Notes under the pieces: model-generated
What the model saw: only the letters and a program-made list of their open reading frames with translations
Told to the model about the DNA's origin: nothing
Databases searched by the model: none
In this document: one piece after another, positions 38,434-51,375 of the stretch
Layout of the letters: each line of letters begins with the position of its first letter
Numbering within the stretch: position 1 is the first letter of the stretch
Program-made: the position numbers and the translations under genes
Virus record (IMG/VR): IMGVR_UViG_3300026097_000876
Location: 186,001-250,000 of that record
Length of the DNA stretch: 64,000 nt
Direction: 5' to 3' (one strand)

Positions 38434-39277
38434 TATCGTTGTTACAAGTAAACCAGTAGATGGACTTCTTTATTATAGTTACGAATACTGTGATATGCTT
38501 AACAAAGCAGGCTATCCTGCTAAGGTTGTTATTATATGTCACCAAAAATTTAGTGTACTAGATTATATGGAAGTCCTAACCACCAAATACACATATGTAG
38601 ATAATGTTGTGTATAACAATTTAAATGTAGGCAATGACGATGTAACACTTGTTATGGGCAGGAGTATGATTACACTGTCTTGGATCAATTACAACGATTA
38701 TACAGAAGAACAAAAACAAACACTGCATAGTGTATTTGCTAATAAAGTAATAAGTGTGTATTCAGAAAATCATCCTGCACAATATCCGCAGGCAGTAGAG
38801 TTTTATAGCCCTAAACAAATTGTAGACCTATGCGACACTGAAGTGTATCCTAATGGCGTAGGAGAACACTTTGAAAAAACAATTAATTTTAGTATATATA
38901 AACCGCACACAGACAACATACAATTTAAACATTTATTTCTAGGAACAAACGACAAATACTACGCAACAGTAGAAAAGGTAATTGACCAATTTCCTGATCA
39001 CGGGATCTTGACATATGACGAAAAGTATGTTAATATTAAAAATAATAACGTATTTGCACCTGTAGGAAATCTAATGGGCATGTTCGAAACATATGTTTAC
39101 ACAAAAGAAACATTTGATCCGGCTCCTAGAATCTTTCAAGAGTGCAAATATTATGGAAAGGATGTGATTTACTTGAGAGACAAAAACATACAAGACGGCG
39201 GCAGTGTGTACTGGAAACGAGATCTAAAAGAACCAGATGTAACAGCAATCATAAATGCTATAAAGGAATTTAAATGA
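38426..39277 (+). CDS. Hypothetical protein (possibly GT-B-like)
   Basis: 283 aa; DPAPRIFQECKYYGK weakly resembles GT-B C-terminal motifs. Confidence 0.45.
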   Translation: MINIVVTSKPVDGLLYYSYEYCDMLNKAGYPAKVVIICHQKFSVLDYMEVLTTKYTYVDNVVYNNLNVGNDDVTLVMGRSMITLSWINYNDYTEEQKQTLHSVFANKVISVYSENHPAQYPQAVEFYSPKQIVDLCDTEVYPNGVGEHFEKTINFSIYKPHTDNIQFKHLFLGTNDKYYATVEKVIDQFPDHGILTYDEKYVNIKNNNVFAPVGNLMGMFETYVYTKETFDPAPRIFQECKYYGKDVIYLRDKNIQDGGSVYWKRDLKEPDVTAIINAIKEFK

Positions 39278-39633
39278 AAATTGATCCAAAATGTCTAAAA
39301 TTTAATACCCCAAAAAATAAAGGTGCGGCATATACTTCTGATGGATTTATGCTGCCCTGCTGTTGGATAGACGATCCGCCAGTTTATAGATATCTTGTAG
39401 AAATGGGTATGAAAGATCCGGAATTAGCATTAGAAAATAACGATTGCTTAGAAGACATTTTTACATCAGATCAATGGGAGAACTTCTTCCAAAAATTATA
39501 CGATGATCCTGATCGGTGTTCATATATGTGTAAGAAAAAATGCGGCGTTGAACTTACCGACGGCGAAACTGAAATTCGTAAAGTAGAAGAAAGACTAGAG
39601 GTTTTAAAACAAAGTGAAGGAAAGAATTACTGA
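39274..39633 (+). CDS. Stand-alone Twitch/SPASM-like Fe-S protein
   Basis: PKC...GFMLPCCW...CSYMCKKKC cysteine pattern; no radical SAM core. Confidence 0.65.
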   Translation: MKIDPKCLKFNTPKNKGAAYTSDGFMLPCCWIDDPPVYRYLVEMGMKDPELALENNDCLEDIFTSDQWENFFQKLYDDPDRCSYMCKKKCGVELTDGETEIRKVEERLEVLKQSEGKNY

Positions 39634-40357
39634 TACCTATGTAAAATATCAGAAAAATTGCAGGATTAATGTCGATACCTCGCATCGTTGTCCCTTTCGG
39701 TGCCCTCAGTGCGTGAGACAAAAGACAATAAGCCAAGATATGATACGTAGAAGTTTTGATTTGGAAGAACATAACTTTCAAAAAATATTAGATTATTACG
39801 ATAATGGTCCTACATTTTGTGGACAAATTTCTGACCCTATCTATCATCCTAGATTTTTAAATTTTTTAAAAATGTGCAATGGACGAAATAGAGCTGTTCG
39901 TATTGCCACAGTAGGTAGTGGTAAAAGCGACGAGTGGTGGGACGAGGCTTATAGCTATGGTCTTGGAGAAAATCAGTGGACTTTCGGAGTAGACGGTATA
40001 GACGAAAAGAGCGAACTGTATCGCGTTGGTAGTAATTTCAAAGATCAATGGCGTCGAATGCAACAGGGTAGAGATCTAGGACATGTAATTGTTTGGCAGT
40101 ATATTATATTTGGTTATAATGAACACGAAATAGATCAGGCAGTAGAAATTGCAAAGAAAGAAGATTTTACTCTGCTTTTTGTTAACACAAACAGGGGATT
40201 TAATCCAGAAAGTGATACCCTGAGAAAGAATGTTAATTTTAAAATAAACAGTCCCGATCCAAAGCATCTTACTGATCGTCTTAAGAAAGAATGGTATGCT
40301 CATACCACAGATGTATTTCAGGCCTGGCGTGATCTTCCTCCTTGGAGTCCGAAATGA
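39614..40357 (+). CDS. Radical SAM protein (core only)
   Basis: CPFRCPQC; FCGQISDPIYHP; FGVDG; WQYIIFGYNEH. Confidence 0.85.
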   Translation: MKERITDTYVKYQKNCRINVDTSHRCPFRCPQCVRQKTISQDMIRRSFDLEEHNFQKILDYYDNGPTFCGQISDPIYHPRFLNFLKMCNGRNRAVRIATVGSGKSDEWWDEAYSYGLGENQWTFGVDGIDEKSELYRVGSNFKDQWRRMQQGRDLGHVIVWQYIIFGYNEHEIDQAVEIAKKEDFTLLFVNTNRGFNPESDTLRKNVNFKINSPDPKHLTDRLKKEWYAHTTDVFQAWRDLPPWSPK

Positions 40358-40923
40358 AAAGTAAAAAGAATAGCCTAGTTAAATGTGAGCATTATCCAAC
40401 ATTATTTTATGATACGCAATCTGATACTTTTGTAAAGTATTATAGTGATCGAGCTCCTTTTGAAAAATGGTGGAGTGTTTATAGAGAGTATCAAAATTTT
40501 GAACATAGAACTGTGCAGGTTTTAGACGTAAATTTCAAAAAGAAATACTTTGTAATGGAGTCAATAAAAGGTATTAATCTTGAGCACGAGATGATTAAAC
40601 TAGATTTTGAGGATACAAAGAAAGTTCTGACACAGACTTTAGAAATTTTTAGTAATAAATTTAGTTTTGCATGCGAAGCTATGCATGACACAGAGATATT
40701 TTTCCATAAAGACTTTCGAACTGAAAATCTCATGTTTGACGAAAATAAAAATGTGAGACTAGTAGACCCTGATAGTTTCAGTGTTTTGCCACTTGATAGA
40801 ATGAATAATTTATTGTTTTTTGGAAGGTACATGGATACTCTTACATCCATTCGAGAACGCCTTAGTTTTGCAGAGCTTACCGAAGAGCAAAAATATCGAT
40901 TAGGAAGAGGATATTTATACTAA
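40354..40923 (+). CDS. Small protein-kinase-fold phosphotransferase (Kdo/RIO/APH-like)
   Basis: FVMESIKG, HKDFRTENLMFD (HxDxxxxN catalytic loop), VRLVDPD; ATG start at 40354 preferred. Confidence 0.65.
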   Translation: MKSKKNSLVKCEHYPTLFYDTQSDTFVKYYSDRAPFEKWWSVYREYQNFEHRTVQVLDVNFKKKYFVMESIKGINLEHEMIKLDFEDTKKVLTQTLEIFSNKFSFACEAMHDTEIFFHKDFRTENLMFDENKNVRLVDPDSFSVLPLDRMNNLLFFGRYMDTLTSIRERLSFAELTEEQKYRLGRGYLY

Positions 40924-41996
40924 TGATTTCTTATGACGGCTGGGATAAGGAGTATCAAGAAAATCGAGAAGAATACTTGGAAGTGTTTGATCGTTTTATG
41001 AGTCAAATGAATTACGAAAATAATGAAGACTGGGAGCGTAGTTTTGCAGAACGTGTAGGTCGTAAACATTGTGTTAGTGTTGCTAGTGCCACAGATGCAC
41101 TACACTTTACGCTATTAGCACACGGTATTGGTACAGACGACGAAGTACTAGTAACAGACTTTAGTTGGATTAGTAGTTCAGCTTGCGTAAGTATGGTAGG
41201 TGCCACTCCAGTATTTTGCGACATTGACTTAGATACATATCATATGAGCTTAGACAGCATACAGCGCATGTACAGCAGTAAGACTAAGGCAATTGTATAT
41301 GTACACCTATTTGGTAACATGACTGACACAAGCGCAATACAAGCGTTCTGTGCAGAAAAAAATATACTGTTTATCGAAGATGCTGCACAGAGTTTAGGTA
41401 GTAGTCTCAACGGTGTTAGAGCAGGCACTATTGGCGATTGCAGTGTGTACAGTTTTAACTCAAACAAAGTTATTGCAGGCATCAACGGCGGCGGCGTTGT
41501 GTTAACCGACAACGAAGATATTGCAAAACGTGTAAAGCAGATTCGCAGACACGGCAAAGACAAAACATTCGACACGCTAGGCTACAACAGTCGCATGTAT
41601 GTGCTTAATGCAGAAATTATTAATCTGCGATTACAACGTGCAGAAGAAAATCAATCAAAGCGTCAAGATATTGCAAAACGTTACAACGAAGCATTTGCAG
41701 AGTTGTCTGTAGTAACACAAGCAATGTCAAACGGATTAAATCACAACTATCACAAATACGTAGTAAGATTCAAAGACAAGGACACTAGAAAGCGTGTTAA
41801 AGACGCCTTAAATGCTAGTATACACTACGAGACTCCGTTGAGTGCTAACGGTATGTACGACACACTACAGTGCAGGAGAGACGCTTGTACAGCGTCTGTG
41901 ACGGCATCTAATACTGTTTTATCGTTGCCGATACACGCTTGGTTAACTGAGGATGAAATAAGTAATATTATCAAACTAGTTAAGGATAACATATGA
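40923..41996 (+). CDS. DegT/DnrJ/EryC1/StrS family PLP-dependent aminotransferase
   Basis: SATDAL, GATPVFCDID, VHLFG, IEDAAQS, SFNSNK (PLP lysine), GGGVV, GYNSRM, LSLPIH. Confidence 0.93.
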   Translation: MISYDGWDKEYQENREEYLEVFDRFMSQMNYENNEDWERSFAERVGRKHCVSVASATDALHFTLLAHGIGTDDEVLVTDFSWISSSACVSMVGATPVFCDIDLDTYHMSLDSIQRMYSSKTKAIVYVHLFGNMTDTSAIQAFCAEKNILFIEDAAQSLGSSLNGVRAGTIGDCSVYSFNSNKVIAGINGGGVVLTDNEDIAKRVKQIRRHGKDKTFDTLGYNSRMYVLNAEIINLRLQRAEENQSKRQDIAKRYNEAFAELSVVTQAMSNGLNHNYHKYVVRFKDKDTRKRVKDALNASIHYETPLSANGMYDTLQCRRDACTASVTASNTVLSLPIHAWLTEDEISNIIKLVKDNI

Positions 41997-42712
41997 TAGA
42001 AGAATTATTTGGTAAAAGAAAACATGTTGTACATTATGATACAGAAATTATTCCTACACGATCCGAAGTAGAAGAAATACTAAGAGTAGGGTATTCTCTA
42101 GCAACATCCAAACAGAAGGCTTATGCCTATAAGTTTTGGATATTAGGACCAAATAAAGAACGCAGTCACATGTTATGGGAAATGGCTGAAGGTAGGAAAA
42201 TTGATGTGGATTACGAAGCATACGGTACTACTACAAAAGATAAAAAATATGTTGCTAATCCCGCTTTGTTCCATCTAAAAAGTTCTCCGTGGACTTTTTT
42301 GGTTACTCCGAGAACTTCGTCCCCTAATCCGCATTTTAAGTATGCATTTGAAACTGCTGGCAGTAAATGGCAGTTAGAAGACAGGGACTTTGTTAATACA
42401 AAAAACAGAGAATCAAATGCCATAGATGTAGGAATGGTGGCAAAAACAATCAGCGGAGCCGCATTTGAAAAAGGTTGGGATGTATCATACAATATCTGTT
42501 TTGAAAACGACAAAACAAAATGGCCAAAGTGTCTTCCATTCATTAGTGACCATGCTACAGGTTTTAGGCCTGTAATGATGATGACCTTAGGAAAAGGAAA
42601 AAAATATTATTATGAAAGATTGATTAGTGACGGCACAATCGCAAATGATCCTAAATATAATGCAGATCCTCCTTTTGAAACTATTTTCGAATTTTTTGAC
42701 GAGAACAAATGA
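41993..42712 (+). CDS. Nitroreductase-fold protein 1
   Basis: KRKHVVHYD, ATSKQKAYAYKFWILGP, IDVGM, MTLGKG. Confidence 0.65.
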   Translation: MIEELFGKRKHVVHYDTEIIPTRSEVEEILRVGYSLATSKQKAYAYKFWILGPNKERSHMLWEMAEGRKIDVDYEAYGTTTKDKKYVANPALFHLKSSPWTFLVTPRTSSPNPHFKYAFETAGSKWQLEDRDFVNTKNRESNAIDVGMVAKTISGAAFEKGWDVSYNICFENDKTKWPKCLPFISDHATGFRPVMMMTLGKGKKYYYERLISDGTIANDPKYNADPPFETIFEFFDENK

Positions 42713-43398
42713 TGGAAAATTATAAGTATGTTTTAGAGTATGATAATTCTGCATTTATTGATCCTACTCATATTGATAATGCATTAGAATATGCTTGGAA
42801 GGTAACTCCGTCAAAACAAAATTTTATGCCTTATAAGGTGCATGTTCTCTCACCCGAAGCTGAAGGGCATAAACAAATTTTATACAACAAAGCACTCATT
42901 CAACAAGCGCGAGGATCAGGAATTAAGATAAAAAATTCTAAAGCCTTGCAAAAATATGATCAGCGATTAAAGAATGATGACATGCAACCTTTTTTTCGTA
43001 ATTTAAAAACAGCTCCGTATGTTTTTATATTTGCACAGCGGGTTGAAGACGAACCTAATCCATTCCAGCAACATAATATCAATTATGGATTAACATATTG
43101 TCAAACAGAGAATAGCGACCCCGGACATGCACACGGTAAAGATATTGCAAGAATTGAAATAGGCATGTTCAGTGCAAATCTTGCATCGCATTTGTTAACT
43201 AATAAGATAGATGTTTCTTTTACACAGTGTTTTCCTGGTGAGCTTGACACTTGGACTGAAAAAGAATTTAAATTTTTAAAAGATGACGTTCTTTTAATTA
43301 TGACGGCAGGCAAAGGCAAAATATATAGAAGAGATCTTAAATCACAAGAAAAAGATCTAAAACCAAATTTTAAAAGAATAGTAAACAAGGAAGTATAA
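42709..43398 (+). CDS. Nitroreductase-fold protein 2
   Basis: AWKVTPSKQNFMPYKVHVL, TAPYVFIF, IEIGMFSANL, MTAGKG. Confidence 0.7.
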   Translation: MMENYKYVLEYDNSAFIDPTHIDNALEYAWKVTPSKQNFMPYKVHVLSPEAEGHKQILYNKALIQQARGSGIKIKNSKALQKYDQRLKNDDMQPFFRNLKTAPYVFIFAQRVEDEPNPFQQHNINYGLTYCQTENSDPGHAHGKDIARIEIGMFSANLASHLLTNKIDVSFTQCFPGELDTWTEKEFKFLKDDVLLIMTAGKGKIYRRDLKSQEKDLKPNFKRIVNKEV

Positions 43399-44078
43399 TG
43401 ATTAAAAAGATTTTAGACAAATGGAAATATGTTCTTGCATTCGATACTGAACACAGAACAGACAAAACTGTTATTAAAGACATAATGCATACAGCTTGGC
43501 AGACAACGCCGAGCAAAAACAGTTTCATGCCTTATAGAGTTCATGTATTTGGCCCAGGAGAAGAAAAGTCAAAAAGAATAATATATGAAACAAGTGCCGC
43601 AAAAGAGAAAAATTCAAACAGCAGAAATTCGAACCCCGATCAATGGGAAGTTAATTCAAATAAAGCAAGTTTATTAACAGCTGAATATATCCTGGTATTC
43701 ACTCCGAGAGCAGAAGATAATCCTAGTCCTTGGCAAATTCATCTACACAACGGCGGGTGCTACATGGATGCATGGTACGAAGACAAATTAAAAAAATATA
43801 GGGCAACAATTTTAGTAGAAGTTGGGTTATTTGCACAAGCAGTCTCTACATTGTGTTTAGAACAAGGTCTGCATACTAACTACATTTCATCATTTGAATC
43901 AGATTTAGAATACTGGAAAGATCTTGACTTTATAAAGCATCCACCTTGTCTAATTATGGGAATAGGTAAGGCTAAGTATTTTCGTAGAGAATGGATGAAA
44001 AAAATCGGATGGGACGAAGGTGATCATAAACCGAGCTTCAGCAGTGTAGTTAATTTCCATGGAATTGATACCGAATGA
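43398..44078 (+). CDS. Nitroreductase-fold protein 3
   Basis: AWQTTPSKNSFMPYRVHVFGP, VEVGLFAQAV...GLHTNYI, MGIGK. Confidence 0.7.
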   Translation: MIKKILDKWKYVLAFDTEHRTDKTVIKDIMHTAWQTTPSKNSFMPYRVHVFGPGEEKSKRIIYETSAAKEKNSNSRNSNPDQWEVNSNKASLLTAEYILVFTPRAEDNPSPWQIHLHNGGCYMDAWYEDKLKKYRATILVEVGLFAQAVSTLCLEQGLHTNYISSFESDLEYWKDLDFIKHPPCLIMGIGKAKYFRREWMKKIGWDEGDHKPSFSSVVNFHGIDTE

Positions 44079-44713
44079 TGTCAACCGATCAAATGGAAAA
44101 TAATTTTTTTAACCGAACTGAAGTAAATGTGGATATTGCATATAGATGTGCTCTTGACTGTCCGAGATGTCAACGTTGGAGGGTCTATAGAAAGCATAAC
44201 AAGAAAGTTCCAGGTTATGACATGACCATGACTGAGTTTAAAAGAATTGTCTCACACTTTACTGAAGTTAGTTTTTGCGGACAGTATTCTGATCCAATTC
44301 ATCATCCGAAATTTATTGATTTTCTAAAACTATGCAAGGATAAAGGTATAAAAGCATCTGTGCATAATGCATCATCTGCTAAATCAGAAGATTGGTATAT
44401 TCAAGCATTTAAAGCAAATCCCAATGCTCAATGGTTTTTTGGAATAGACGGGTTGCCTCATCAGAGCCATCAGTATAGAATTAATCAAGATGGCGTAAAA
44501 CTTTATAATATTATGCTAGAAGCAAAAAAGTATTTAAAAACAAAACCAATATGGCAGTACATCATTTTTAATTACAATGAAAATCATGTCGAAGAAGCTA
44601 AAAAAATGGCTGACGACGACGACGTCTATTTTATGTTAGTAAGATCTTCTAGGTGGGACCGAGACGATCCATTAATGCCTACTCTTAAAGAATATAAGTT
44701 AAATAGATTATGA
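44075..44713 (+). CDS. Radical SAM protein (core only), paralogue of 39614
   Basis: CALDCPRC; FCGQYSDPIHHP; FGIDG; WQYIIFNYNENH. Confidence 0.85.
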   Translation: MMSTDQMENNFFNRTEVNVDIAYRCALDCPRCQRWRVYRKHNKKVPGYDMTMTEFKRIVSHFTEVSFCGQYSDPIHHPKFIDFLKLCKDKGIKASVHNASSAKSEDWYIQAFKANPNAQWFFGIDGLPHQSHQYRINQDGVKLYNIMLEAKKYLKTKPIWQYIIFNYNENHVEEAKKMADDDDVYFMLVRSSRWDRDDPLMPTLKEYKLNRL

Positions 44714-45045: not shown

Positions 45046-45064
45046 CAACATATGGAAGATTAAA

Positions 45065-45736
45065 ATGTTAGAAGAGTTAATGCTGAAAAGGCAACAAGTA
45101 AGATTTTTTGATAGAGAAAACTATCCTAGCGAAAAAATAATTTACTCAATCTTAGAAAAAACTTATCAAATAGTTCCATCTAAACAAAATTTAGTGCCTT
45201 ACAAAGTCCATGTGTTAGGTCCAAGCATGGAAGAACATAAAAGAGAGTTATATCTTTTATCTTCTAAACAACAGCTAGGTGACAAGTTAAATTATAACGA
45301 ACTTGCCAAACGTAATAGCGGAAATACACAGTTGTTGGCTCCTTATGTTCTACTTTTTGAAAAAAGATTACCAGAACCTAACGATTTTGTAAAAAAAGAA
45401 ATGCTCCTAGGACATAAATTTAATGAATGTTTGCCCGAACAACAAAGAAATCAAAGGATAGCTACAGCTATCGAGGTGGGTATGTTTACAGCAATGCTAT
45501 CTGGGTTTTGTATGGAGGAAGATATTTCTCTAAGTTATATAGGATGCCTTCCTGGAAACCCAGAAACCTACAAAAATAATCCTTCTGTCAATTTTGATTT
45601 TATCGAACAACACATTTTTTTAGGGATAGGCATAGGTTACCAAGACTATTCTATCGAAGAAAATCTTAGATTATCTCGTTTACAAAATTGTGGAGAGATA
45701 AAACCTAAAAGTGATAATGTAATTGTTAAACATTAA
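45065..45736 (+). CDS. Nitroreductase-fold protein 4
   Basis: KRQQVRFFD, VPSKQNLVPYKVHVLGP, IEVGMF, GIGIGY; ATG 45065 preferred over TTG 45038. Confidence 0.7.
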   Translation: MLEELMLKRQQVRFFDRENYPSEKIIYSILEKTYQIVPSKQNLVPYKVHVLGPSMEEHKRELYLLSSKQQLGDKLNYNELAKRNSGNTQLLAPYVLLFEKRLPEPNDFVKKEMLLGHKFNECLPEQQRNQRIATAIEVGMFTAMLSGFCMEEDISLSYIGCLPGNPETYKNNPSVNFDFIEQHIFLGIGIGYQDYSIEENLRLSRLQNCGEIKPKSDNVIVKH

Positions 45737-45741
45737 TGGTG

Positions 45742-45770
45742 TTGACAATTCATATTAATTAGTGTATAAT
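45742..45770 (+). promoter_or_regulatory. Sigma70-type promoter
   Basis: TTGACA-17 bp-TATAAT, perfect consensus, upstream of AGGA and ATG 45799. Confidence 0.85.
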
Positions 45771-45798: not shown

Positions 45799-46635
45799 AT
45801 GTTTCTAACCCTTGAAGATTTAAAAGGTTCAGAATATCGTACAGTAGACTTTTATATGACAAAAAGTTGTAATAAGAGTTGCCATTATTGTACTGCATGG
45901 ACTCTTGAAATGCGTAATCTTGATGTTGACATGGATTTTTTGCGTACTATTTTAGAAGGTCTTGCTCCTTATAAAACACGTATTTGTTTGCTCGGCGGTG
46001 AACCTGGACTTGTTAAGAACTTAAGAGAAGTTATTGCCGAAATTAAAAAGTATCCCAATCTAGTAGTACAGGTACTTTCTAACAGTCTTATACGTAAATT
46101 TTATCCAGAAGTATTAGAAGATCCTGAGATTATTTACATCGAACATTTAGTGTTGGACTTTTACGAAGATCGAATTGAAAAGTTAGGTAACTATGATTTC
46201 TTTGAACCTAATGATCTAAACAATTATAATCTTATAATTGAAACACCTGGATACTTTGATTACAGAGACAAACATGATTTGTCTTATCTTATGCACAAAA
46301 ATACAGAATTTAAAGAATATAATTCACGCTCTCCGGATTTCTTTTCAGATCATAAAATTGTACAAGCGCCAGAAATTGAAAGACGAGTATGTGCTAAGTT
46401 TCCGCAAGTTCCTGTGTTTGATTTTGAAATACAAAAAATTAGACATTGTAGCAGGAAAGTTATTAACGGTAGCCGTCAATTTGATGTTACTAAAGAAAAT
46501 ATTGAAAAGATGATGAACTACGAACTTTTTGAATTCGAAAACTATTGCAAAGGTTGTATGGATATTATTCCTCCGAGGCCAGTAGCACGTAGATTAGAAA
46601 TATTAGAAAAAATAGCATTAGAAGATATCACATGA
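45799..46635 (+). CDS. Radical SAM protein with C-terminal auxiliary cysteines
   Basis: CNKSCHYC, LGGEPG; C-terminal C...HC...CKGC. Confidence 0.85.
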   Translation: MFLTLEDLKGSEYRTVDFYMTKSCNKSCHYCTAWTLEMRNLDVDMDFLRTILEGLAPYKTRICLLGGEPGLVKNLREVIAEIKKYPNLVVQVLSNSLIRKFYPEVLEDPEIIYIEHLVLDFYEDRIEKLGNYDFFEPNDLNNYNLIIETPGYFDYRDKHDLSYLMHKNTEFKEYNSRSPDFFSDHKIVQAPEIERRVCAKFPQVPVFDFEIQKIRHCSRKVINGSRQFDVTKENIEKMMNYELFEFENYCKGCMDIIPPRPVARRLEILEKIALEDIT

Positions 46636-48095
46636 AGTTTTATGCAGTAGCCTTAAATATGCACGATCATAATACATATGACGGTGTAACACACTATCAA
46701 CTAGAAAGACACACCCGTGCTAAACATAATCTAAATTATAAAAATGTTCATGATCCAGAACCGAGTAAACGTTTTTTTGATAATTTTGTAAAGACTAATG
46801 ATAAAGTACTTTGCTTTACTGTTTCTAATCTAGGACAAGAATTTGTATTAGACCGGATTGAAAAAAAATTCGGAAAAGACTTTTTAAACTTCAGACCTAG
46901 CCATATCTGGGATTGTTATCATACCGATGATTTTTATTATATCGATCATCATCAAAGTCATGCTACCTATGCTCTTCTAAGTTCAGGATTTCCGGAAAGT
47001 GACATTCTTGCTATCGACGGCAGAGGTTGGCAATTTAATTGTATTTTTGTTAACAAAGAAGGAAGAATAAAAGATCTTACAGATGAATTATCTATTGGCG
47101 GACTTTGGAATAGGCTATCGCAAGATCTTGGTTTTGGATATTTAGGCGCAGGTAAAGTAATGGGTCTTGCTGGTTACGGTAAGTATGATCATAGGGTTCA
47201 CGCTATGTTAGAAGTATATCTCACTAATGATAATAACCTTCCTAACTGGTATAAAAAAATTATCGACAGCTGCAACAAAGAAGATATTGCTTTTACTCTA
47301 CAATATGTTACAGAAGAATTAATTAAAAAATATGTATATCCTCTCAAAACTAGTGACAATTTGTGTGTAGCAGGCGGAGTAGCATATAATGGCTACATGA
47401 ATGAGGAATTTACTAAACATTATAAAAACGTACATGTACCGCCTGCTGTTGGTGACGAAGGTCAGGCAATAGGTACTTACATGCATGCCGAATATGTAGT
47501 AAACGGAAATGTACACATTCCTTGTGTATACTCTGGTGTTGAACATAAGTACACACTACCAGATACATTTGAAGATTTGAATATCCCTAAACTGGCACAA
47601 CAAATAGCAGATGGCAAAATAGTAGGATGGTTCCAAGGAAAGAGTGAAAGTGGTAATAGAGCACTAGGCAATCGTAGTATACTTGCAGATCCACGCAATC
47701 CCGATATTAAAGATATTATTAACAGTAAGATTAAACTACGTGAAGACTTTAGACCGTTTGCTCCTAGCGTACTAGAAGAACATTATACAGAATATTTTGA
47801 TACTAATCAGCCATCGCCTTATATGAGCAGGATTGTAAAAGTTAAAGGTAACATCATACCGGGCGTAACTCACGTAGACAGTACAGCAAGGATTCAAACT
47901 GTTAATAAAACACAGAATCAAAAATTTTATGATTTAATTAACGAATTTTATAAAATTACAGGAGTTCCTATGTTACTTAACACAAGTTTTAACTGTCAAG
48001 AACCTATTGTAGAAACTCCGCACGAAGCATATGAAACTTATAACAAAACTTCTTTGGATATTCTTGTTATTAATGATAAAGTGATTGAAAAATGA
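46632..48095 (+). CDS. Carbamoyltransferase (NodU/CmcH/TobZ family)
   Basis: HHQSHA, IDGRG, GKVMGLAGYG, AGGVAYN, GDEGQAIG, RALGNRSILADP, REDFRPFAPS, HVDSTARIQTV, LLNTSFN. Confidence 0.95.
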   Translation: MKFYAVALNMHDHNTYDGVTHYQLERHTRAKHNLNYKNVHDPEPSKRFFDNFVKTNDKVLCFTVSNLGQEFVLDRIEKKFGKDFLNFRPSHIWDCYHTDDFYYIDHHQSHATYALLSSGFPESDILAIDGRGWQFNCIFVNKEGRIKDLTDELSIGGLWNRLSQDLGFGYLGAGKVMGLAGYGKYDHRVHAMLEVYLTNDNNLPNWYKKIIDSCNKEDIAFTLQYVTEELIKKYVYPLKTSDNLCVAGGVAYNGYMNEEFTKHYKNVHVPPAVGDEGQAIGTYMHAEYVVNGNVHIPCVYSGVEHKYTLPDTFEDLNIPKLAQQIADGKIVGWFQGKSESGNRALGNRSILADPRNPDIKDIINSKIKLREDFRPFAPSVLEEHYTEYFDTNQPSPYMSRIVKVKGNIIPGVTHVDSTARIQTVNKTQNQKFYDLINEFYKITGVPMLLNTSFNCQEPIVETPHEAYETYNKTSLDILVINDKVIEK

Positions 48096-48697
48096 TAGAC
48101 GAAATTATTTTTAGAAATGTACTAAAAGAAATTAAACAAAATTCAGAATATGCTGACGATATTATTGATTCATTCAGTGACAATCAGTTTATTGCTAAAC
48201 GCAAAGTTTTAGAATATGCTAATAGATTAAATATACTAGATAAAGATTCAGAAGTAATTATTTTTGGATCTTGGTACGGAAGTATTTTAATTCCTGGATT
48301 AGTTGATAAAGTAAAAAAAATTAGTTGTATTGATATTGACAAACGAGTTTTACAAACTGCAAAAAATAGATTCTTCAAAGATTATACCAATATAGATTAT
48401 ATTGCAGGCAACGTATTTGATTTAGATCTCAAAAGATATCACACGGCTAATCTTTTTATAAACACGTCGTGCGAACATATGCCGTCGATGAAGGAATTTT
48501 TATACTGGCCTGACCAAACCCATTTTGTCTTCACAAGTAATGATATGTTCAACATCGAAGGACACATAAATTGTGTAAACAGTTTAGATGAATTTAAAGA
48601 ACAATTGCCCGAACGTGCAGAAGTATTGTATGAAGAAGAAGTAGAGGATACCAGAGGCACACGTTATATACTAGTCGGAAAAATTAACGGTATTTAA
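48092..48697 (+). CDS. Class I SAM-dependent methyltransferase-like protein
   Basis: IFGSWYG glycine loop, CIDID, INTSCEHM. Confidence 0.65.
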   Translation: MIDEIIFRNVLKEIKQNSEYADDIIDSFSDNQFIAKRKVLEYANRLNILDKDSEVIIFGSWYGSILIPGLVDKVKKISCIDIDKRVLQTAKNRFFKDYTNIDYIAGNVFDLDLKRYHTANLFINTSCEHMPSMKEFLYWPDQTHFVFTSNDMFNIEGHINCVNSLDEFKEQLPERAEVLYEEEVEDTRGTRYILVGKINGI

Positions 48698-49931
48698 TTC
48701 GTATACTTCTTGTAAACTGATCTAATTTTTGATAAATTTCTTCTACAGTTTTGCCTAGTAGAATTAATTGTCCGTTTTGATGCCCTATACTTGCATTCCA
48801 ATTGTCTGGTATTACACTCTTAGAAGTTAGTGTGCTACTAAAATGATGTACACTTTCATCTGCCTCAGGCCAGTCGATACTTTCAATTGTTCCGGGTGCA
48901 AATCTAAATTGTTTTCCTAAAGAATAATTAAACTGCGTATCATGTTTTTGCGTAAAGTCTGAAATATAGTCTTTCGAATTTAGCTTAACTAATTCTCGAG
49001 TTACATTATAACCGTATATTTTATGAAAACTTGTTGCAGTATGACTACTACCAGGACGCAAATTAGTTTCAATTACGTTAATTACATTTAAATCTTTATC
49101 GTAAAAAAATTCTGTTCGTAGAGCACCGTTTTTGATTTCGAGAACATCTGTTAGTTGTTGTAAAATTGATAGTACTTCGTCTGTTAAGAATTTTGGATCA
49201 CTAGGGAACAATGCTTCTTCGTAATAGAAATAAGGTAATCTTTCTTGCTCTAATTTGCTTTTTTGATCTCTAGCATAATGTGTGTAAGGTTTAATTATAC
49301 CGTCTTGTACATAACAGTTTACACCACTAAAATAATCAGCATCTGTATATTGTTGAACTAGATAATAATCATATTTCTTATCTAAATTCCATCCATTTGA
49401 ACGATCTTGATCATCCATGAATGATTTTAATTCAGCTGCATTATGTATTTGTTTAATTCCGTTGCTTCCTGCCCCGTAGTTAGGTTTTACAATACAGGGA
49501 TACTCCAATGTTGATAAGTCTTTAATTTCGTCATATCGATAGGACCAGTCTGGTCTAGGCAAATTTTGATTTTCTAATAATTTATGCCATGCTTCTTTAC
49601 TTGCACAGTGTGTTGCAGCAACTTCTCCAATGCCCTTAAATCCCATACGAGTGTTTACACATGCCATAGCCATGCTAGCATCGTTAGTACATGGGTGTGT
49701 AACAGTCATACTAGCGCCACTAGTTTTTGCAAGATTTACTAATGCATCGATATCCATATAACTTATAATATGAAATTCGTCTATCATGTCTTTTACTGTG
49801 TCGTAATAGTATTTGCTAGTAATATCCATAGGATGTGTTGCTACTATTTTATATCCAAGTGCTTGTGCTTCTCGCATATAAAGATAACTATCATCAAAAA
49901 CACCAATGTGTAATGCTACTTTATCCGCCAT
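48684..49931 (-). CDS. ATP-grasp ligase
   Basis: YPCIVKPNYGAGSNGI, YLVQQY, TEFF...VIETNLRPG; C-terminal domain like L-amino-acid ligases. Confidence 0.85.
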   Translation of the reverse strand: MADKVALHIGVFDDSYLYMREAQALGYKIVATHPMDITSKYYYDTVKDMIDEFHIISYMDIDALVNLAKTSGASMTVTHPCTNDASMAMACVNTRMGFKGIGEVAATHCASKEAWHKLLENQNLPRPDWSYRYDEIKDLSTLEYPCIVKPNYGAGSNGIKQIHNAAELKSFMDDQDRSNGWNLDKKYDYYLVQQYTDADYFSGVNCYVQDGIIKPYTHYARDQKSKLEQERLPYFYYEEALFPSDPKFLTDEVLSILQQLTDVLEIKNGALRTEFFYDKDLNVINVIETNLRPGSSHTATSFHKIYGYNVTRELVKLNSKDYISDFTQKHDTQFNYSLGKQFRFAPGTIESIDWPEADESVHHFSSTLTSKSVIPDNWNASIGHQNGQLILLGKTVEEIYQKLDQFTRSIRIKYR

Positions 49932-51375
49932 AAATATCTCTTATATCTTTGCCTGTAATTTTTTTATATCGTTCTACTAGAAATGTTGGTGAGTCTAACG
50001 CAAATTTGTAACCTAAATCTCTGCAATGATTGCGTAATCTAAACCATCTTTCAATTCTTACTTTTTGTGTGTTATCACCGATTTCCCATGCTCCTACATC
50101 GTCATAGTCTACACCCATTTCTTGAAACTGATCGAATAGCGGCGTGCCTGGATAGATTCGCATAGTTGCTCCGAGACTGACTTGAAAAACTGTTCCATCT
50201 TTTGCATACTTGGCATTTCGAGTAAACATGTCCATAGTTTCTTGAAATTCTTCCTCGCCTTCGCCCGGGTATCCAATTAGCATCATCATTACAGTATCGA
50301 TGCCGTTTTTAGAACATTGTTCCAAAGTGTAGTCAATATCAACAGCTCTAGCACCCTTTTTCATTGCATTAAGAACTTTTTGACTGCCGCTCTCGATACC
50401 TAACAGCATTCTAGTACATCCGCTCTTTGATAACTTTTCGTATATTTCTGGACCTTGCGAATTAGGAGGTCTCACAATAAATTGTCCTCCCCATTTTACA
50501 CCATCTAAATTTTCTTCAATGAGTGTGTCCATCATTGCATCCATTTGGGGAATATTACCGTTTAGTAAACTATCTGTAAAATAAAACTCTTTTATTCCTG
50601 GATGCGTCTTAACTTGATGTATAATTTCTTTTGCAATAGTTACTCCGCTTTTACTAGTAAAAGATGGCCAGCGTTTGCCTACATCACAAAACTTACAACG
50701 TCTAATACACCCTCTACTTCCAGTTAAGTATAACAGATCTGTTCCTTTTGGATCTTCAAATGGATCTCTAAACAAATGACTATATTGTGACAAGTCATAA
50801 TCTGTATAATCAGCAAACGGAAGTGAATCTAACTCTTTCATCTGTATAGGAAACTTTCCGTTTATTCCTGGATAGTCTGTATTTCCGTTAAGCAGATGTA
50901 GTATAGGATTTTCTCCTTCTGCTTCCACATATGCATAAATTCTATCTTGTTTAAGATTAGTAGGCCCGTAATCAGGTGATGCACCCGGTCCTCCTAATAT
51001 AACTTTAACTTCGGGCAATCTAATAAGTATTTCGTCTAAGAACAAGTCACACATTACAAGTTGCCAATGACTTAATAATGTTATACCAACAAACTTTGGA
51101 TTATAACCTGCAATTTTCTCTACAGCCTGTTCTACTAACGGAACAAATATATGTTTAACTTTTTCAAAATATTTCTTGTTAATTAGTGTTTGGTCGTTGT
51201 CTAGCCAAAGATGAGCATATTCGTCTTTTACAATATTCCAAAATTCTACATTAAAGTCAATACATTTACTAGTATAACCATGTTCTTCGACAACTGCCTT
51301 TAGTGCTGCTGGCCCAATAAGAGGGCTTTGTACTTCAAATTTTGGAATACTAATAAAAACAATATCTTTATTCAT
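49921..51375 (-). CDS. B12-binding-domain radical SAM protein
   Basis: N-terminal cobalamin-binding-like domain (ILGGP, EAEGE), GSRGCIRRCKFC, FTDSLLNG, GIESGSQKVL, IGYPGE. Confidence 0.9.
   Translation of the reverse strand: MNKDIVFISIPKFEVQSPLIGPAALKAVVEEHGYTSKCIDFNVEFWNIVKDEYAHLWLDNDQTLINKKYFEKVKHIFVPLVEQAVEKIAGYNPKFVGITLLSHWQLVMCDLFLDEILIRLPEVKVILGGPGASPDYGPTNLKQDRIYAYVEAEGENPILHLLNGNTDYPGINGKFPIQMKELDSLPFADYTDYDLSQYSHLFRDPFEDPKGTDLLYLTGSRGCIRRCKFCDVGKRWPSFTSKSGVTIAKEIIHQVKTHPGIKEFYFTDSLLNGNIPQMDAMMDTLIEENLDGVKWGGQFIVRPPNSQGPEIYEKLSKSGCTRMLLGIESGSQKVLNAMKKGARAVDIDYTLEQCSKNGIDTVMMMLIGYPGEGEEEFQETMDMFTRNAKYAKDGTVFQVSLGATMRIYPGTPLFDQFQEMGVDYDDVGAWEIGDNTQKVRIERWFRLRNHCRDLGYKFALDSPTFLVERYKKITGKDIRDIYGG

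What the first reader, a model, noticed from the sequence alone, without database searches (positions are those of the whole stretch)
39274..51375. Enzyme set mirrors aminoglycoside/amino-sugar tailoring chemistry
Known family parallels: Twitch radical SAM dehydrogenase plus DegT aminotransferase (BtrN/BtrR), O-carbamoyltransferase (TobZ/NodU), B12 radical SAM C-methyltransferase (GenK/GenD1), ATP-grasp (BtrJ) and phosphotransferase (GenP). Seen: members of all these families in this stretch. Inference: oxidise-transaminate-carbamoylate-methylate chemistry on a sugar or cyclitol. No 2-deoxy-scyllo-inosose synthase or NDP-sugar dehydratase is visible, so the scaffold is unknown and family membership does not fix substrate.
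Basis: partly seen in the sequence, partly recalled or inferred. Interest (0 to 1): 0.6.

Follow-up and report, generated by a model that had tools for sequence, protein, structure and literature searches.

The report
Phage sugar-tailoring cassette plus importer module
The stretch lies in a large marine T4-like phage and holds two separate conserved gene modules: one probably builds and decorates an amino sugar with radical SAM enzymes, and the other is built around a complete nutrient importer. It is not a single aminoglycoside-like pathway.

Summary
It spans two convergent operons.

Module A (plus strand, about 33393-48697) is a conserved cassette found only in phage-like contigs. It occurs in at least 25 marine myophage contigs and in Pelagibacter phage Mosig. 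Its order is:
- a GT-B-fold glycosyltransferase-like protein;
- a two-subunit (split) twitch radical SAM enzyme;
- a DegT aminotransferase;
- a small 7-Cys radical SAM enzyme;
- a NodU/TobZ-type O-carbamoyltransferase;
- a methyltransferase.

Relatives add a GT8 glycosyltransferase and an SGNH-like hydrolase. This copy adds four nitroreductase-like paralogs and a kinase-like protein.

Module B (48684-59713) holds the ATP-grasp and the B12 radical SAM enzymes. In other phages these travel with a PotD-like ABC importer, a PP-loop ATPase, a GNAT and SpeD, not with the sugar genes.

Amino-sugar tailoring (oxidise, transaminate, carbamoylate, methylate) is the best reading of module A. The 261.8-kb contig has no 2-deoxy-scyllo-inosose synthase. 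The DegT scores higher against NDP-sugar aminotransferases than against inosose aminotransferases. The related N_Twi radical SAM family sits in a bacterial O-antigen cluster. The acceptor is unknown: virion protein, host envelope or a free metabolite.

Verdict: partly supported; a new variant of a known kind.

The parts
33393..35022 (+). Two paralogous DxD proteins (33393-34220, 34213-35022), probably GT-A-type nucleotide-sugar transferases. Upstream part of module A.
   Evidence: 30% identical to each other. No Pfam hit. Atlas feature score 0.95-0.96, with 180-182 shared features, to clusters carrying Nucleotid_trans/GT8. hhalign against the GT8 family of relatives is not significant, so this is a lead only.
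35503..38433 (+). N-terminal-twitch radical SAM enzyme (36423-37757), flanked by two paralogous DxD proteins of unknown family (35503-36426, 37750-38433).
   Evidence: NF033640 N_Twi_rSAM 310 bits against a cut-off of 170. The flanking proteins are 29% identical to each other. The family lies in a bacterial O-antigen cluster.
38426..39277 (+). GT-B-fold glycosyltransferase-like protein ('U283'), the first gene of the conserved cassette.
   Evidence: No Pfam, NCBIfam or PHROG hit. AF2 model pLDDT 87.7. Foldseek and VIA hits are all GT-B enzymes: Z 13.9 to PimA, 13.4 to BshA, 12.4 to T4 alpha-glucosyltransferase, each over residues 1-283. Present in 24 related loci.
39274..40357 (+). Split twitch radical SAM enzyme, pair 1: small Cys-rich subunit (39274-39633), then the core with CX3CX2C (39614-40357, GTG start). 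The gene order is swapped relative to pair 2.
   Evidence: In fused relatives the Cys-rich part is C-terminal. The same swapped order occurs in L015 and L032.
40342..40923 (+). Small protein-kinase/Bud32-like protein, found only in this phage.
   Evidence: Pkinase 23.8 bits (below the cut-off) and Bud32 22 bits. No homolog in any related locus except the same phage.
40923..41996 (+). DegT/DnrJ/EryC1/StrS PLP aminotransferase.
   Evidence: PF01041 291 bits. An SxxxK lysine is present. All equivalog models score below their cut-offs: PseC 194, LegC-like 192, ArnB 163. PDB: 7b0d 214, QdtB 172, WbpE 166, perosamine synthase 161, 2-DOI aminotransferases 126-132 bits.
41993..44078 (+). Three tandem nitroreductase-fold (FMN) paralogs: 41993-42712, 42709-43398, 43398-44078.
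   Evidence: Weak PF00881 hits. 23-33% identical to each other. A family profile hits PDB nitroreductases and iodotyrosine deiodinase at E about 1e-5.
44075..45045 (+). Split twitch radical SAM enzyme, pair 2: core (44075-44713) and small Cys-rich subunit (44710-45045).
   Evidence: The core has invariant C25/C29/C32. The small subunit has conserved C9/C26/C27/C80/C84. The predicted complex scores 0.92 against a best control of 0.00. More than 500 metagenomic clusters are mostly about 200-230 aa among those listed, so the split is the normal state. hhalign to the N_Twi family: core 97% probability, small subunit 57%.
45038..45736 (+). Fourth nitroreductase-like paralog.
45742..45770 (+). Perfect sigma-70 consensus (TTGACA-17-TATAAT) in the only sizeable intergenic gap of the cassette, just before the 7-Cys radical SAM gene.
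   Evidence: 12 of 12 matches. Sequence read. Function not shown.
45799..46635 (+). Small radical SAM enzyme with seven invariant cysteines (C24/C28/C31 plus C198/C217/C250/C253). Candidate BtrN-like twitch dehydrogenase.
   Evidence: Alignment. PF04055 31.6 bits. AF2 pLDDT is only 65. Foldseek top hits are AbmM, MoaA, EpeE and viperin-like enzymes; BtrN ranks 10. Present in 21 related loci, next to DegT and the carbamoyltransferase.
46632..48095 (+). NodU/TobZ/NovN/GdmN-type O-carbamoyltransferase.
   Evidence: PDB: GdmN 173, NovN 162, TobZ 147 bits. phrog_1601, 376 bits. 59% identical to the Mosig protein.
48092..48697 (+). SAM-dependent methyltransferase-like protein, the last gene of module A. 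In related loci it follows the carbamoyltransferase, directly or after one or more intervening genes.
   Evidence: Weak Methyltransf_25 hit. Present in 18 related loci.
48684..51375 (-). ATP-grasp ligase (48684-49931) and B12-binding radical SAM enzyme (49921-51375). These are the distal genes of the minus-strand importer operon (module B).
   Evidence: No close solved relative. In other phages they are linked to the importer. The same junction appears in independent assemblies.
51368..54842 (-). Complete ABC importer: two permeases, an ATPase, and a PotD-like solute-binding protein with a signal peptide.
   Evidence: The solute-binding protein scores 184 bits to a spermidine/putrescine-binding protein, 8jv1. 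TM segments are found only in the permeases, apart from one nitroreductase-like paralog that marginally exceeds the crude threshold.
54974..59713 (.). The rest of module B: PP-loop ATPase (54974-55828), GNAT (55825-56274), second B12 radical SAM (56271-57743), 2OG oxygenase (57771-58373), AspH-like cupin (58370-58864, minus strand) and SpeD (59360-59713).
   Evidence: Orthologs are 33-68% identical and in one operon with the importer and the ATP-grasp in L058/L073; a subset also in L060.

Best explanation
The stretch lies in the hypervariable, tail-fibre-proximal island of a jumbo T4-like marine myophage. It spans two independent modules.

Module A (plus strand, about 33393-48697) is a cytoplasmic sugar/glycan assembly and tailoring cassette.
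- Glycosyltransferase-like proteins (GT-B U283 and upstream GT-A-like proteins; GT8 in relatives) transfer sugars taken from host or phage nucleotide-sugar pools.
- Twitch radical SAM enzymes (the 7-Cys enzyme at 45799-46635 and the two-subunit core-plus-Cys-rich pairs) oxidise or otherwise activate sugar carbons.
- The DegT enzyme converts a keto sugar into an amino sugar.
- The NodU/TobZ-type enzyme O-carbamoylates a hydroxyl through carbamoyl-AMP.
- The methyltransferase methylates.
- The nitroreductase-fold FMN proteins are accessory redox partners of unknown step.

The acceptor is not known. A virion (tail-fibre or baseplate) protein is favoured slightly, then a host envelope glycan, then a free metabolite.

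Module B (48684-59713) is a separate import-and-modify unit. It is built on a PotD-like ABC importer with a PP-loop ATPase, a GNAT, an ATP-grasp, B12 radical SAM enzymes, a 2OG oxygenase and SpeD.

Shown: family and fold assignments, conservation of gene order, phage restriction, operon structure, and a predicted complex of the split enzyme. Inferred: every catalytic step, their order, and the substrate.
For: - The window is part of a 261.8-kb viral contig. It carries T4-like baseplate and tail genes. Its closest isolate is Pelagibacter phage Mosig.
- The cassette order GT-B / split rSAM / DegT / 7-Cys rSAM / carbamoyltransferase / methyltransferase recurs in at least 25 viral contigs.
- Among about 185,000 species genomes it was found in only three MAG contigs, and those carry the same cassette and other gene families shared with the related viral contigs.
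- U283 has a GT-B fold: pLDDT 87.7, VIA Z 12-14 over its full length.
- Relatives add a GT8 transferase (28.5 bits against a cut-off of 24.3) and an SGNH-like hydrolase with conserved Ser, Gly, Asn, Asp and His.
- The GT-A-like assignment of 34213-35022 comes from the Atlas search.
- The DegT is closest to NDP-sugar aminotransferases.
- The carbamoyltransferase is an unambiguous NodU/TobZ family member.
- The 7-Cys radical SAM has an invariant second four-Cys set, as twitch enzymes do.
- The split enzyme is predicted to form a complex: score 0.92, best control 0.00. That mark was reached by 51 of 78 solved complexes and 2 of 108 mismatched pairs; the partner's pLDDT was 88 and the runs agreed in at least 97% of contacts.
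- The split enzyme is remotely homologous to N_Twi_rSAM. In a bacterial genome that family forms a four-copy array inside a Wzm/Wzt O-antigen cluster with RmlC, RmlD, a TylF-like O-methyltransferase and a WbsX glycosyltransferase.
- The radical SAM cluster motif sits at about residue 25 in each enzyme, which leaves no room for an N-terminal peptide-recognition domain. No cassette protein has a clear transmembrane segment; one nitroreductase-like paralog marginally exceeds the crude hydropathy threshold.
- Module B linkage.
- The late-promoter motif NATAAATA occurs only 12-35 nt before structural genes. The last one on the plus strand (32067) precedes an uninterrupted, overlapping gene string that runs to 45736.
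Against: - No enzyme was assayed and no product is known.
- The cassette has no nucleotidyltransferase or 4,6-dehydratase. The only phage sugar-activation genes found (RfaE-like, epimerase, cupin) lie about 90 kb away.
- The model of the 7-Cys radical SAM is poor (pLDDT 65). Its fold hits include peptide-modifying enzymes (EpeE, anSME, sactipeptide synthases) as well as BtrN.
- The link from the split enzyme to N_Twi_rSAM is remote. It rests on one bacterial context; a second genome's context was uninformative.
- The same islands are rich in families typical of peptide modification: B12 radical SAM, AspH-like, 2OG oxygenase, nitroreductase, ATP-grasp.
- The GT-A-like calls upstream lack Pfam support.
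- No RNA data were found.
Confidence: 0.55

Rival explanations
1. Protein or peptide post-translational modification (RiPP-like). The radical SAM, nitroreductase-fold, B12 radical SAM, AspH/2OG and ATP-grasp enzymes modify a phage structural protein or a peptide directly. The sugar enzymes are at most a side branch.
For: - The islands hold up to eight radical SAM genes, with nitroreductase, AspH-like and B12 radical SAM genes.
- Fold hits of the 7-Cys enzyme include EpeE, anSME and sactipeptide synthases.
- NCBIfam weak hits include RiPP C-methyltransferases and LanL.
- The island sits among tail-fibre genes and behind a late promoter.
Against: - The radical SAM cluster motif starts at about residue 25, so there is no room for an N-terminal RRE/PqqD-like domain.
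- The cassette genes overlap, leaving no room for a precursor ORF.
- There is no protease or exporter.
- DegT, a NodU-type carbamoyltransferase, GT-B, GT8 and SGNH are not RiPP families, and they form the conserved core.
- N_Twi_rSAM has a glycan context in bacteria.
Confidence: 0.17
2. One reading: one pathway makes an aminoglycoside- or aminocyclitol-like small molecule, with all six families (including the ATP-grasp, B12 radical SAM and kinase) tailoring one scaffold.
For: - Superfamily parallels exist for each enzyme.
- The top PDB hit of the DegT is deposited as 'glutamine--scyllo-inositol transaminase'. That appears to be an automatic family name; I could not trace the entry.
- All cassette proteins are soluble.
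Against: - The 261.8-kb contig has no DHQ-synthase/DOIS family gene.
- 2-DOI aminotransferases score lower than NDP-sugar aminotransferases.
- The ATP-grasp and B12 radical SAM belong to another conserved module on the other strand.
- The kinase-like gene is not APH-like and is unique to this phage.
- There are no resistance or export genes.
Confidence: 0.06
3. Nucleic-acid hypermodification. The GT-B enzyme glycosylates phage DNA, as T4 alpha- and beta-glucosyltransferases do, and the other enzymes tailor the DNA-bound sugar. Alternatively the Kae1/YrdC-like carbamoyltransferase and the Bud32-like kinase act on tRNA.
For: - T4 alpha-glucosyltransferase is among the fold matches of U283 (Z 12.4).
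- Phage DNA glycosylation with tailoring is known (PMC13326640).
- The TsaD model scores 24.2 bits on the carbamoyltransferase, and the kinase-like ORF has Bud32-like hits.
Against: - No thymidylate-synthase homolog (hydroxymethylase or hydroxylase) and no ThyX were found in the 261.8-kb contig. The complete Mosig genome, which carries the cassette, also has no thymidylate-synthase homolog.
- The 2OG oxygenase is PF13759, not TET/JBP.
- T4 AGT scores no better than generic GT4 enzymes.
- The carbamoyltransferase scores far higher on the NodU/TobZ models.
Confidence: 0.07
4. Same chemistry, but the target is the host envelope. The cassette alters host LPS or capsule sugars during infection to block superinfection, as proposed for LPS genes of pelagimyophages. 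This is a variant of the best explanation that differs only in the acceptor.
For: - PMC7029224 places LPS-type glycosyltransferases and radical SAM cassettes in this island and proposes O-chain modification.
- N_Twi_rSAM lies in a bacterial O-antigen cluster.
- A sigma-70-type promoter precedes the rSAM / carbamoyltransferase / methyltransferase genes.
Against: - The cassette has no membrane protein, flippase, polymerase or lipid-carrier transferase.
- The bulk of the cassette follows a late promoter together with structural genes.
Confidence: 0.15

Closest known systems
Hypervariable tail-fibre island ('HRC') of pelagimyophages and Pelagibacter phage Mosig EXVC030M (PMC7029224; MT647606)
   Same: Same genomic place (downstream of the giant VrlC-like baseplate gene, among tail fibres). 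Same cassette order in Mosig: nitroreductase, GT-B-like protein annotated as 'MoaA', radical SAM, small Cys protein, DegT, radical SAM, carbamoyltransferase, methyltransferase. [quoted passage not shown]
   Different: No function has been assigned there. The GT-B protein is mis-annotated as a molybdenum cofactor enzyme in Mosig. This phage is much larger (at least 262-332 kb). It has duplicated radical SAM and nitroreductase genes, lacks the GT8 and SGNH genes, and adjoins the importer module.
BtrN/BtrR (butirosin), and the analogous WbpB/WbpE and DesI/DesII pairs (from my own knowledge of these pathways)
   Same: The logic of making a keto sugar or inosose and transaminating it with a DegT enzyme. 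A small radical SAM enzyme with a second four-Cys cluster site sits next to a DegT gene.
   Different: No specific sequence match to BtrN. Fold rank is only 10 on a weak model. No DOIS gene. The DegT is closer to QdtB, WbpE and perosamine synthase than to BtrR-type enzymes. A DesII-like deamination after transamination is equally compatible with the gene adjacency.
TobZ/NodU/NovN/GdmN O-carbamoyltransferases
   Same: Both domains are present and score far above their cut-offs. A methyltransferase usually follows it in the cassette (directly, or after one or more intervening genes), reminiscent of NodU/NodS.
   Different: Shorter (487 aa against 576-700). The N-terminal domain matches only profile positions 123-344. 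The acceptor is unknown. Cyanophage homologs (32% identical) stand alone between the major head gene and gp3.
N_Twi_rSAM (NF033640) arrays in bacterial Wzm/Wzt O-antigen clusters
   Same: 36423-37757 is a full member (310 bits). The split enzymes are remote homologs of both its twitch domain and its core. Tandem paralogs occur in both bacteria and phages. The context is sugar genes.
   Different: In the split phage enzymes the twitch domain is a separate polypeptide, encoded either before or after the core. In some relatives it is fused C-terminally rather than N-terminally.
Virus-encoded virion glycosylation systems (chloroviruses, mimiviruses, mycobacteriophages; from my own knowledge)
   Same: Virus-encoded glycosyltransferases plus sugar-tailoring enzymes acting in the cytoplasm, without membrane-linked steps.
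   Different: No radical SAM or carbamoyltransferase steps are known to me in those systems. No evidence here that virion proteins carry glycans.

Membership tests
DegT/DnrJ/EryC1/StrS aminotransferases | PF01041 domain above its cut-off, with the PLP-binding lysine | tested here: met
   291 bits against a cut-off of 19.8. An SxxxK lysine is present in the translated sequence.
Specific NDP-sugar aminotransferase equivalogs (PseC, LegC-like, ArnB, WecE, DesI) | Score above the curated equivalog cut-off | tested here: not met
   Best scores are 194 (cut-off 423), 192 (420), 163 (631) and 145 (650).
2-deoxy-scyllo-inosose (BtrR/BtrS-type) aminotransferases and aminoglycoside pathways | A DOIS (DHQ-synthase family) scaffold enzyme in the genome, and the closest similarity to inosose aminotransferases | tested here: not met
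   No PF01761 match in 261.8 kb (the contig is about 73% complete). 2-DOI aminotransferases score 126-132 bits against 161-172 for NDP-sugar enzymes.
NodU/CmcH/TobZ O-carbamoyltransferases | Kae1-like N domain plus YrdC-like C domain | tested here: met
   Carbam_trans_C 224.7 bits and Carbam_trans_N 73.4 bits. GdmN, NovN and TobZ score 147-173 bits.
NodU/CmcH/TobZ O-carbamoyltransferases | Identity of the acceptor hydroxyl | not testable with these tools
   Needs an enzyme assay.
Twitch radical SAM dehydrogenases (BtrN type) | A CX3CX2C motif plus a short C-terminal domain with four Cys for one auxiliary cluster | tested here: met
   Invariant C24/C28/C31 and C198/C217/C250/C253 in 13 sequences.
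Twitch radical SAM dehydrogenases (BtrN type) | Closer to BtrN than to other twitch/SPASM enzymes | tested here: inconclusive
   Model pLDDT 65. BtrN ranks 10, behind AbmM, MoaA, EpeE and a viperin-like enzyme. No sequence hit to BtrN in the PDB.
N_Twi_rSAM (NF033640) | Score above the curated cut-off | tested here: met
   36423-37757 scores 310 bits against 170. The split enzymes reach only 18-20 bits, so they are not members, only remote homologs.
Class B (B12) radical SAM methyltransferases such as GenK/GenD1 | An N-terminal B12-binding domain plus a radical SAM core | tested here: met
   PF02310 32.9 bits and PF04055 70.7 bits. All subfamily models score far below their cut-offs.
Class B (B12) radical SAM methyltransferases such as GenK/GenD1 | Genetic linkage to the sugar cassette | tested here: not met
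   It lies on the opposite strand. Orthologs sit in the importer operon in L058/L073. In nine cassette loci it is divergent and paired with an AspH-like gene.
ATP-grasp ligases (BtrJ-like role) | ATP-grasp fold and linkage to the sugar cassette | tested here: not met
   The fold is met weakly (30.7 bits). All three contexts examined place it with the ABC importer. It is absent from the other cassette loci.
Aminoglycoside phosphotransferases (APH/GenP) | An APH-family match | tested here: not met
   Only sub-threshold Pkinase and Bud32 hits, and no APH-family match was listed at E <= 0.01.
GT-B glycosyltransferases | Two Rossmann-like domains superposable on GT-B enzymes | tested here: met
   VIA Z 12-14 with 229-258 aligned residues, and every top hit is a GT-B enzyme. 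Sequence-family membership is not met (no Pfam hit). Nucleotide-sugar binding was not tested.

The most novel reading that the evidence does not exclude
Marine T4-like phages use a phage-restricted cassette to put a carbamoylated, methylated amino sugar on their own tail-fibre or baseplate proteins. The cassette consists of a GT-B transferase, two-subunit twitch radical SAM enzymes, a DegT aminotransferase and a NodU-type carbamoyltransferase. Shuffling of the cassette in the hypervariable island tunes host recognition or virion stability. This would be the first radical-SAM-dependent glycan tailoring pathway described in a virus, and the first radical SAM enzyme whose auxiliary-cluster domain is a separate subunit.
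Probability: 0.2. Interest if true: 0.8.

Novelty: new variant of a known kind. Interest (0 to 1): 0.55.

Why it matters
- Abundance: the radical SAM core alone has more than 500 sequence clusters in ocean metagenomes, and the cassette sits in phages of the most abundant marine bacteria. No function is assigned. Published annotations call its parts 'molybdenum cofactor enzymes' or treat the carbamoyltransferase as a pyrimidine-synthesis enzyme.
- If it tailors a glycan, it adds radical SAM chemistry and O-carbamoylation to the known repertoire of virus-encoded glycobiology. It also gives a concrete, testable hypothesis for what the hypervariable island next to the tail fibres does.
- Enzymology: the split twitch radical SAM enzyme occurs with its twitch part as a separate subunit in either gene order, fused C-terminally, or N-terminal in the related N_Twi family. 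That makes it a natural experiment in domain architecture.
- Testability: the cultured Mosig/HTCC1062 pair carries the core cassette, so the idea can be tested directly.

Tried and rejected
- Megablast of the stretch against phage genomes found only a 443-bp match to Mosig.
- Sequence searches of the radical SAM enzymes against the PDB gave nothing useful.
- hhalign of the GT8 family against the two upstream DxD proteins was not significant. Their GT-A assignment rests on the Atlas search alone.
- The ATP-grasp and the B12 radical SAM enzyme have no close solved relative.
- The pattern scan for ATP-grasp relatives in viral contigs found only the same phage. The protein search then found 23 other clusters.
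- The scan of about 185,000 species genomes with the 7-Cys radical SAM found only three phage-like MAG contigs.
- 'Relatives' cannot be drawn for a virus record.
- A literature search for 7B0D and for cyanophage carbamoyltransferase with radical SAM found nothing.
- No RNA sequencing run holds the stretch, so read laying was not used and expression is untested.
- Host assignment through the solute-binding protein failed: SAR11 homologs are only 33-38% identical.
- DNA glycosylation was considered and set aside.
- A frameshift explanation for the split radical SAM genes was rejected. The split form dominates in metagenomes, and both gene orders occur.

Full report
WHERE THE STRETCH LIES

The window is part of an IMG/VR virus record. 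It is identical to positions 186001-250000 of a 261,806-bp viral contig that CheckV estimates as 73% complete. Proteins of the same phage also occur on independent assemblies of 278.7 kb and 331.6 kb. The left half of the window encodes T4-like baseplate and tail-fibre proteins, including a 4986-aa ORF. The closest isolate is Pelagibacter phage Mosig EXVC030M, family Kyanoviridae. The pelagimyophage literature calls this place the hypervariable region downstream of VrlC. [quoted passage not shown]

CHECK OF THE OBSERVATION

- a DegT aminotransferase (40923-41996, 291 bits);
- a NodU/TobZ-type carbamoyltransferase (46632-48095; 225 and 73 bits);
- a B12-binding radical SAM enzyme (49921-51375, minus strand);
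- an ATP-grasp protein (48684-49931, minus strand);
- three radical SAM cores (39614-40357, 44075-44713, 45799-46635).

The 'phosphotransferase' is a 193-aa ORF with only sub-threshold protein-kinase/Bud32-like hits and no listed APH-family match.

- four paralogous nitroreductase-fold genes (23-33% identical to each other; family profile against the PDB);
- a methyltransferase (48092-48697);
- two small Cys-rich ORFs (39274-39633, 44710-45045);
- the strand change at 48684-48697.

TWO MODULES, NOT ONE

I fetched 35 viral contigs through the radical SAM core 44075-44713 and clustered all their ORFs. A conserved, co-directional cassette recurs at 50-65% amino-acid identity in at least 25 contigs and in Mosig. 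Its order is:
- a 283-aa protein ('U283');
- a radical SAM core of about 210 aa;
- a Cys-rich protein of about 115 aa;
- an SGNH-like protein;
- DegT;
- a radical SAM enzyme of about 278 aa;
- the carbamoyltransferase;
- (sometimes a nitroreductase-like protein);
- the methyltransferase;
- a GT8 glycosyltransferase.

The kinase-like gene, the ATP-grasp and the ABC importer occur in none of these contigs apart from the same phage. B12 radical SAM genes occur in nine, always on the opposite strand and paired with an AspH-like cupin.

A protein search with the ATP-grasp found 23 other clusters. In the contexts I read, the ATP-grasp sits in one operon with a PotD-like solute-binding protein, an ABC ATPase and two permeases. 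A PP-loop ATPase and a GNAT lie in or beside that operon. One lineage adds two B12 radical SAM enzymes, a 2OG oxygenase and SpeD. The orthologs are 33-68% identical to window genes 48684-59713.

The first is the 3' two-thirds of a plus-strand sugar cassette (module A, about 33393-48697). The second is the distal two genes of a convergent importer operon (module B). The junction is the same in independent assemblies, so it is not an assembly artefact.

WHAT MODULE A IS

Evidence that it handles sugars:
- U283 has no family hit. It folds with confidence (pLDDT 87.7) into a GT-B fold. All top structural matches are GT-B nucleotide-sugar enzymes: VIA Z 13.9 to PimA, 13.4 to BshA, 12.4 to T4 alpha-glucosyltransferase.
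- The gene that follows the methyltransferase in relatives is a GT8 transferase.
- The gene before DegT in relatives has SGNH-type conserved Ser, Gly, Asn, Asp and His residues.
- Upstream in the window lie two DxD proteins that the Atlas places with nucleotide-diphospho-sugar transferases (hhalign gave no support).
- Also upstream is a full member of the N_Twi_rSAM family (310 bits), flanked by two more DxD paralogs.
- The DegT has the PLP lysine and scores best against NDP-sugar 3- and 4-aminotransferases: QdtB 172, WbpE 166, perosamine synthase 161 bits. 2-deoxy-scyllo-inosose aminotransferases reach 126-132 bits. The single best hit, 7b0d at 214 bits, carries what I take to be an automatic name; I could not trace the entry.
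- The carbamoyltransferase is a clear relative of GdmN, NovN and TobZ.

THE RADICAL SAM ENZYMES

The 278-aa enzyme has seven invariant cysteines: C24/C28/C31 plus C198/C217/C250/C253. That is the layout of a twitch enzyme with one auxiliary cluster. From memory, the spacing resembles that of BtrN. The AF2 model is weak (pLDDT 65). Its fold matches (AbmM, MoaA, EpeE, viperin-like enzymes, BtrN at rank 10, anSME, BlsE, DesII) do not tell sugar-acting enzymes from peptide-acting ones.

The core of about 210 aa and the Cys-rich protein of about 115 aa form a split enzyme.
- Fused relatives carry the Cys-rich part C-terminally.
- More than 500 metagenomic clusters are mostly about 200-230 aa among those listed, so the split is normal and not a frameshift.
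- The small protein keeps four invariant cysteines and a fifth in 33 of 36 sequences.
- The complex prediction gives 0.92 against a best control of 0.00. That mark was reached by 51 of 78 solved complexes and 2 of 108 mismatched pairs; the partner's pLDDT was 88 and the runs agreed in at least 97% of contacts. This supports binding but does not show it.
- In pair 1 of the window the gene order is swapped, as in two relatives.
- Profile comparison links the core to the N_Twi_rSAM core (97% probability, E 7.7e-11) and the small subunit to its N-terminal twitch domain (57%, E 1.1e-4).

N_Twi_rSAM is rare in bacteria: 2 of 401 Pseudomonadota genomes searched. In one of those genomes four tandem copies lie inside a Wzm/Wzt O-antigen cluster with RmlC, RmlD, a TylF-like sugar O-methyltransferase, a second methyltransferase and a WbsX glycosyltransferase. 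One copy runs in frame with Wzt. This is the most direct outside evidence that this radical SAM lineage works on glycans. It is one context only.

SCAFFOLD SEARCH IN THE REST OF THE GENOME

The 261.8-kb contig has:
- no DHQ-synthase/DOIS family gene;
- no PF00483 nucleotidyltransferase;
- no SIS_2 isomerase;
- an RfaE-like kinase/cytidylyltransferase, an SDR epimerase and a cupin at contig positions 125284-127740;
- two GT8 genes near 92 kb and 98 kb.

The cassette therefore probably draws on host nucleotide sugars or on a phage ADP-heptose-type pool. About a quarter of the genome was not available.

MECHANISM PROPOSED (INFERRED)

- Glycosyltransferases place a sugar on an acceptor, or the enzymes act on the nucleotide sugar itself.
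- A twitch radical SAM enzyme oxidises a secondary alcohol to a ketone (BtrN-like), and DegT transaminates it. Alternatively DegT acts first and the radical SAM enzyme deaminates (DesI/DesII-like).
- The carbamoyltransferase O-carbamoylates through carbamoyl-AMP.
- The methyltransferase methylates the amine or a hydroxyl.
- The FMN nitroreductase-fold proteins serve an unknown redox step.

The proteins are soluble, apart from one nitroreductase-like paralog that marginally exceeds the crude hydropathy threshold. In each radical SAM enzyme the cluster motif begins at about residue 25, which leaves no room for a peptide-recognition domain.

WHICH ACCEPTOR

The T4-type late-promoter motif NATAAATA is depleted in the window. 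It occurs only 12-35 nt upstream of structural genes. The last one on the plus strand (32067) precedes an unbroken, overlapping gene string that runs to 45736. The simple scan predicts no plus-strand terminator in that stretch. This, and the position among tail fibres, mildly favours a virion protein as target. A perfect sigma-70 consensus at 45742-45770 before the last three genes would also allow early expression, which fits a host-envelope target. I cannot decide between them.

RIVALS

- A peptide or protein-modification role is the main rival, because these islands are rich in B12 radical SAM, AspH-like, 2OG and nitroreductase genes. The conserved core, however, consists of sugar families.
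- DNA glycosylation is unlikely. No thymidylate-synthase homolog and no ThyX were found in the 261.8-kb contig, and the complete Mosig genome has no thymidylate-synthase homolog either.
- The aminoglycoside/cyclitol reading lacks its defining scaffold enzyme and depends on genes that belong to module B.

NOVELTY

The cassette exists in published genomes, but only as family-level and partly wrong annotations. PHROGs has no family for five of the ten module A proteins searched. A scan of about 185,000 species genomes found the 7-Cys enzyme only on three phage-like MAG contigs. I rate it a new variant of a known kind: a virus-encoded glycan-modification cluster, here with radical SAM and carbamoyl chemistry and a split twitch enzyme.

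LIMITS

- There are no expression data.
- The host is unresolved.
- One of the two structure models is weak.
- All catalytic roles are inferred.

Noticed in passing
window 48684-59713: A phage-encoded complete ABC importer (PotD-like binding protein with signal peptide, ATPase, two permeases) is linked to a PP-loop ATPase, a GNAT, an ATP-grasp, two B12 radical SAM enzymes, a 2OG oxygenase and SpeD. The importer, PP-loop, GNAT and ATP-grasp recur as a unit in at least two other phage lineages (L058/L073, L060). The substrate is unknown, possibly a polyamine-like amine.
   Followed up: partly
window 11045-26005: A single 4986-aa ORF lies between the baseplate wedge gene and the tail-fibre genes, presumably the VrlC-like giant baseplate protein. 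It is far longer than Mosig's VrlC gene, which spans about 6.1 kb.
   Followed up: no
whole phage (G001): The same phage was assembled independently at 261.8, 278.7 and 331.6 kb, and CheckV rates the 261.8-kb contig 73% complete. That would make it a jumbo T4-like (Kyanoviridae-like) phage. This is well above the 132-164 kb of the complete pelagimyophage genomes in PMC7029224 and, from memory, above other known members of the family.
   Followed up: partly
window 7002, 7476, 26002, 30547, 32067 (+) and 60739 (-): The T4-type late-promoter motif NATAAATA occurs 12-35 nt upstream of structural gene starts. TATAAATA is depleted overall (4 found, 12.5 expected).
   Followed up: partly
window 39614-40357: The public gene call for this radical SAM core starts at 39740, which would cut off the CX3CX2C motif. 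The GTG start at 39614 restores it and matches the paralog from residue 18.
   Followed up: yes
window 39274-40357 against 44075-45045; L027:9953-10954; window 36423-37757: The twitch domain occurs in four arrangements in one gene neighbourhood family: separate gene before the core, separate gene after the core, fused C-terminally, and N-terminal in the related N_Twi family.
   Followed up: partly
G001 122298-127740 (L045:2298-7740): Two tandem tryptophan-halogenase-like genes are followed by an RfaE-like kinase/cytidylyltransferase, an SDR epimerase and a cupin. A NUDIX gene precedes them, next to a gp15-like tail gene. This may be a phage heptose-activation set, about 90 kb from the cassette.
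   Followed up: partly
L068 (G107:C19) 351-13375: A bacterial Wzm/Wzt O-antigen cluster holds four tandem N_Twi_rSAM paralogs. One is in frame with Wzt, giving an 854-aa ORF with ABC_tran, Wzt_C, SPASM and Radical_SAM domains. This suggests radical SAM chemistry on an O-antigen.
   Followed up: partly
L054, L055, L056: Three MAG contigs filed under Rhodobiaceae, Candidatus Pelagibacter and Gammaproteobacteria carry the phage cassette together with gene families shared with the related viral contigs. They look like phage contigs binned into bacterial genomes.
   Followed up: yes
L070 (Synechococcus phage ACG-2014d) 9001-10500: The cyanophage homolog of the carbamoyltransferase (32% identical) stands alone between the major head protein gene and gp3, inside the structural block. 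One cyanophage paper (PMC9146016) describes this gene family as the first enzyme of pyrimidine synthesis, which does not fit a NodU/TobZ-type enzyme.
   Followed up: partly
L073 1-20453: A related phage carries eight radical SAM genes (three with a B12-binding domain match by Pfam or by homology to the window's B12 enzymes), a nitroreductase and an AspH-like gene within 20 kb around the importer module. No DegT or carbamoyltransferase lies in that span.
   Followed up: no
window 62257-64000: A DUF2201 metallopeptidase/VWA-like protein is followed by an ORF that is cut by the window end. In L058 the ortholog's neighbour is an AAA ATPase, the CobT/CobS-like pair common in T4-like marine phages. 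This may bear on how the B12 radical SAM enzymes get their cofactor.
   Followed up: no
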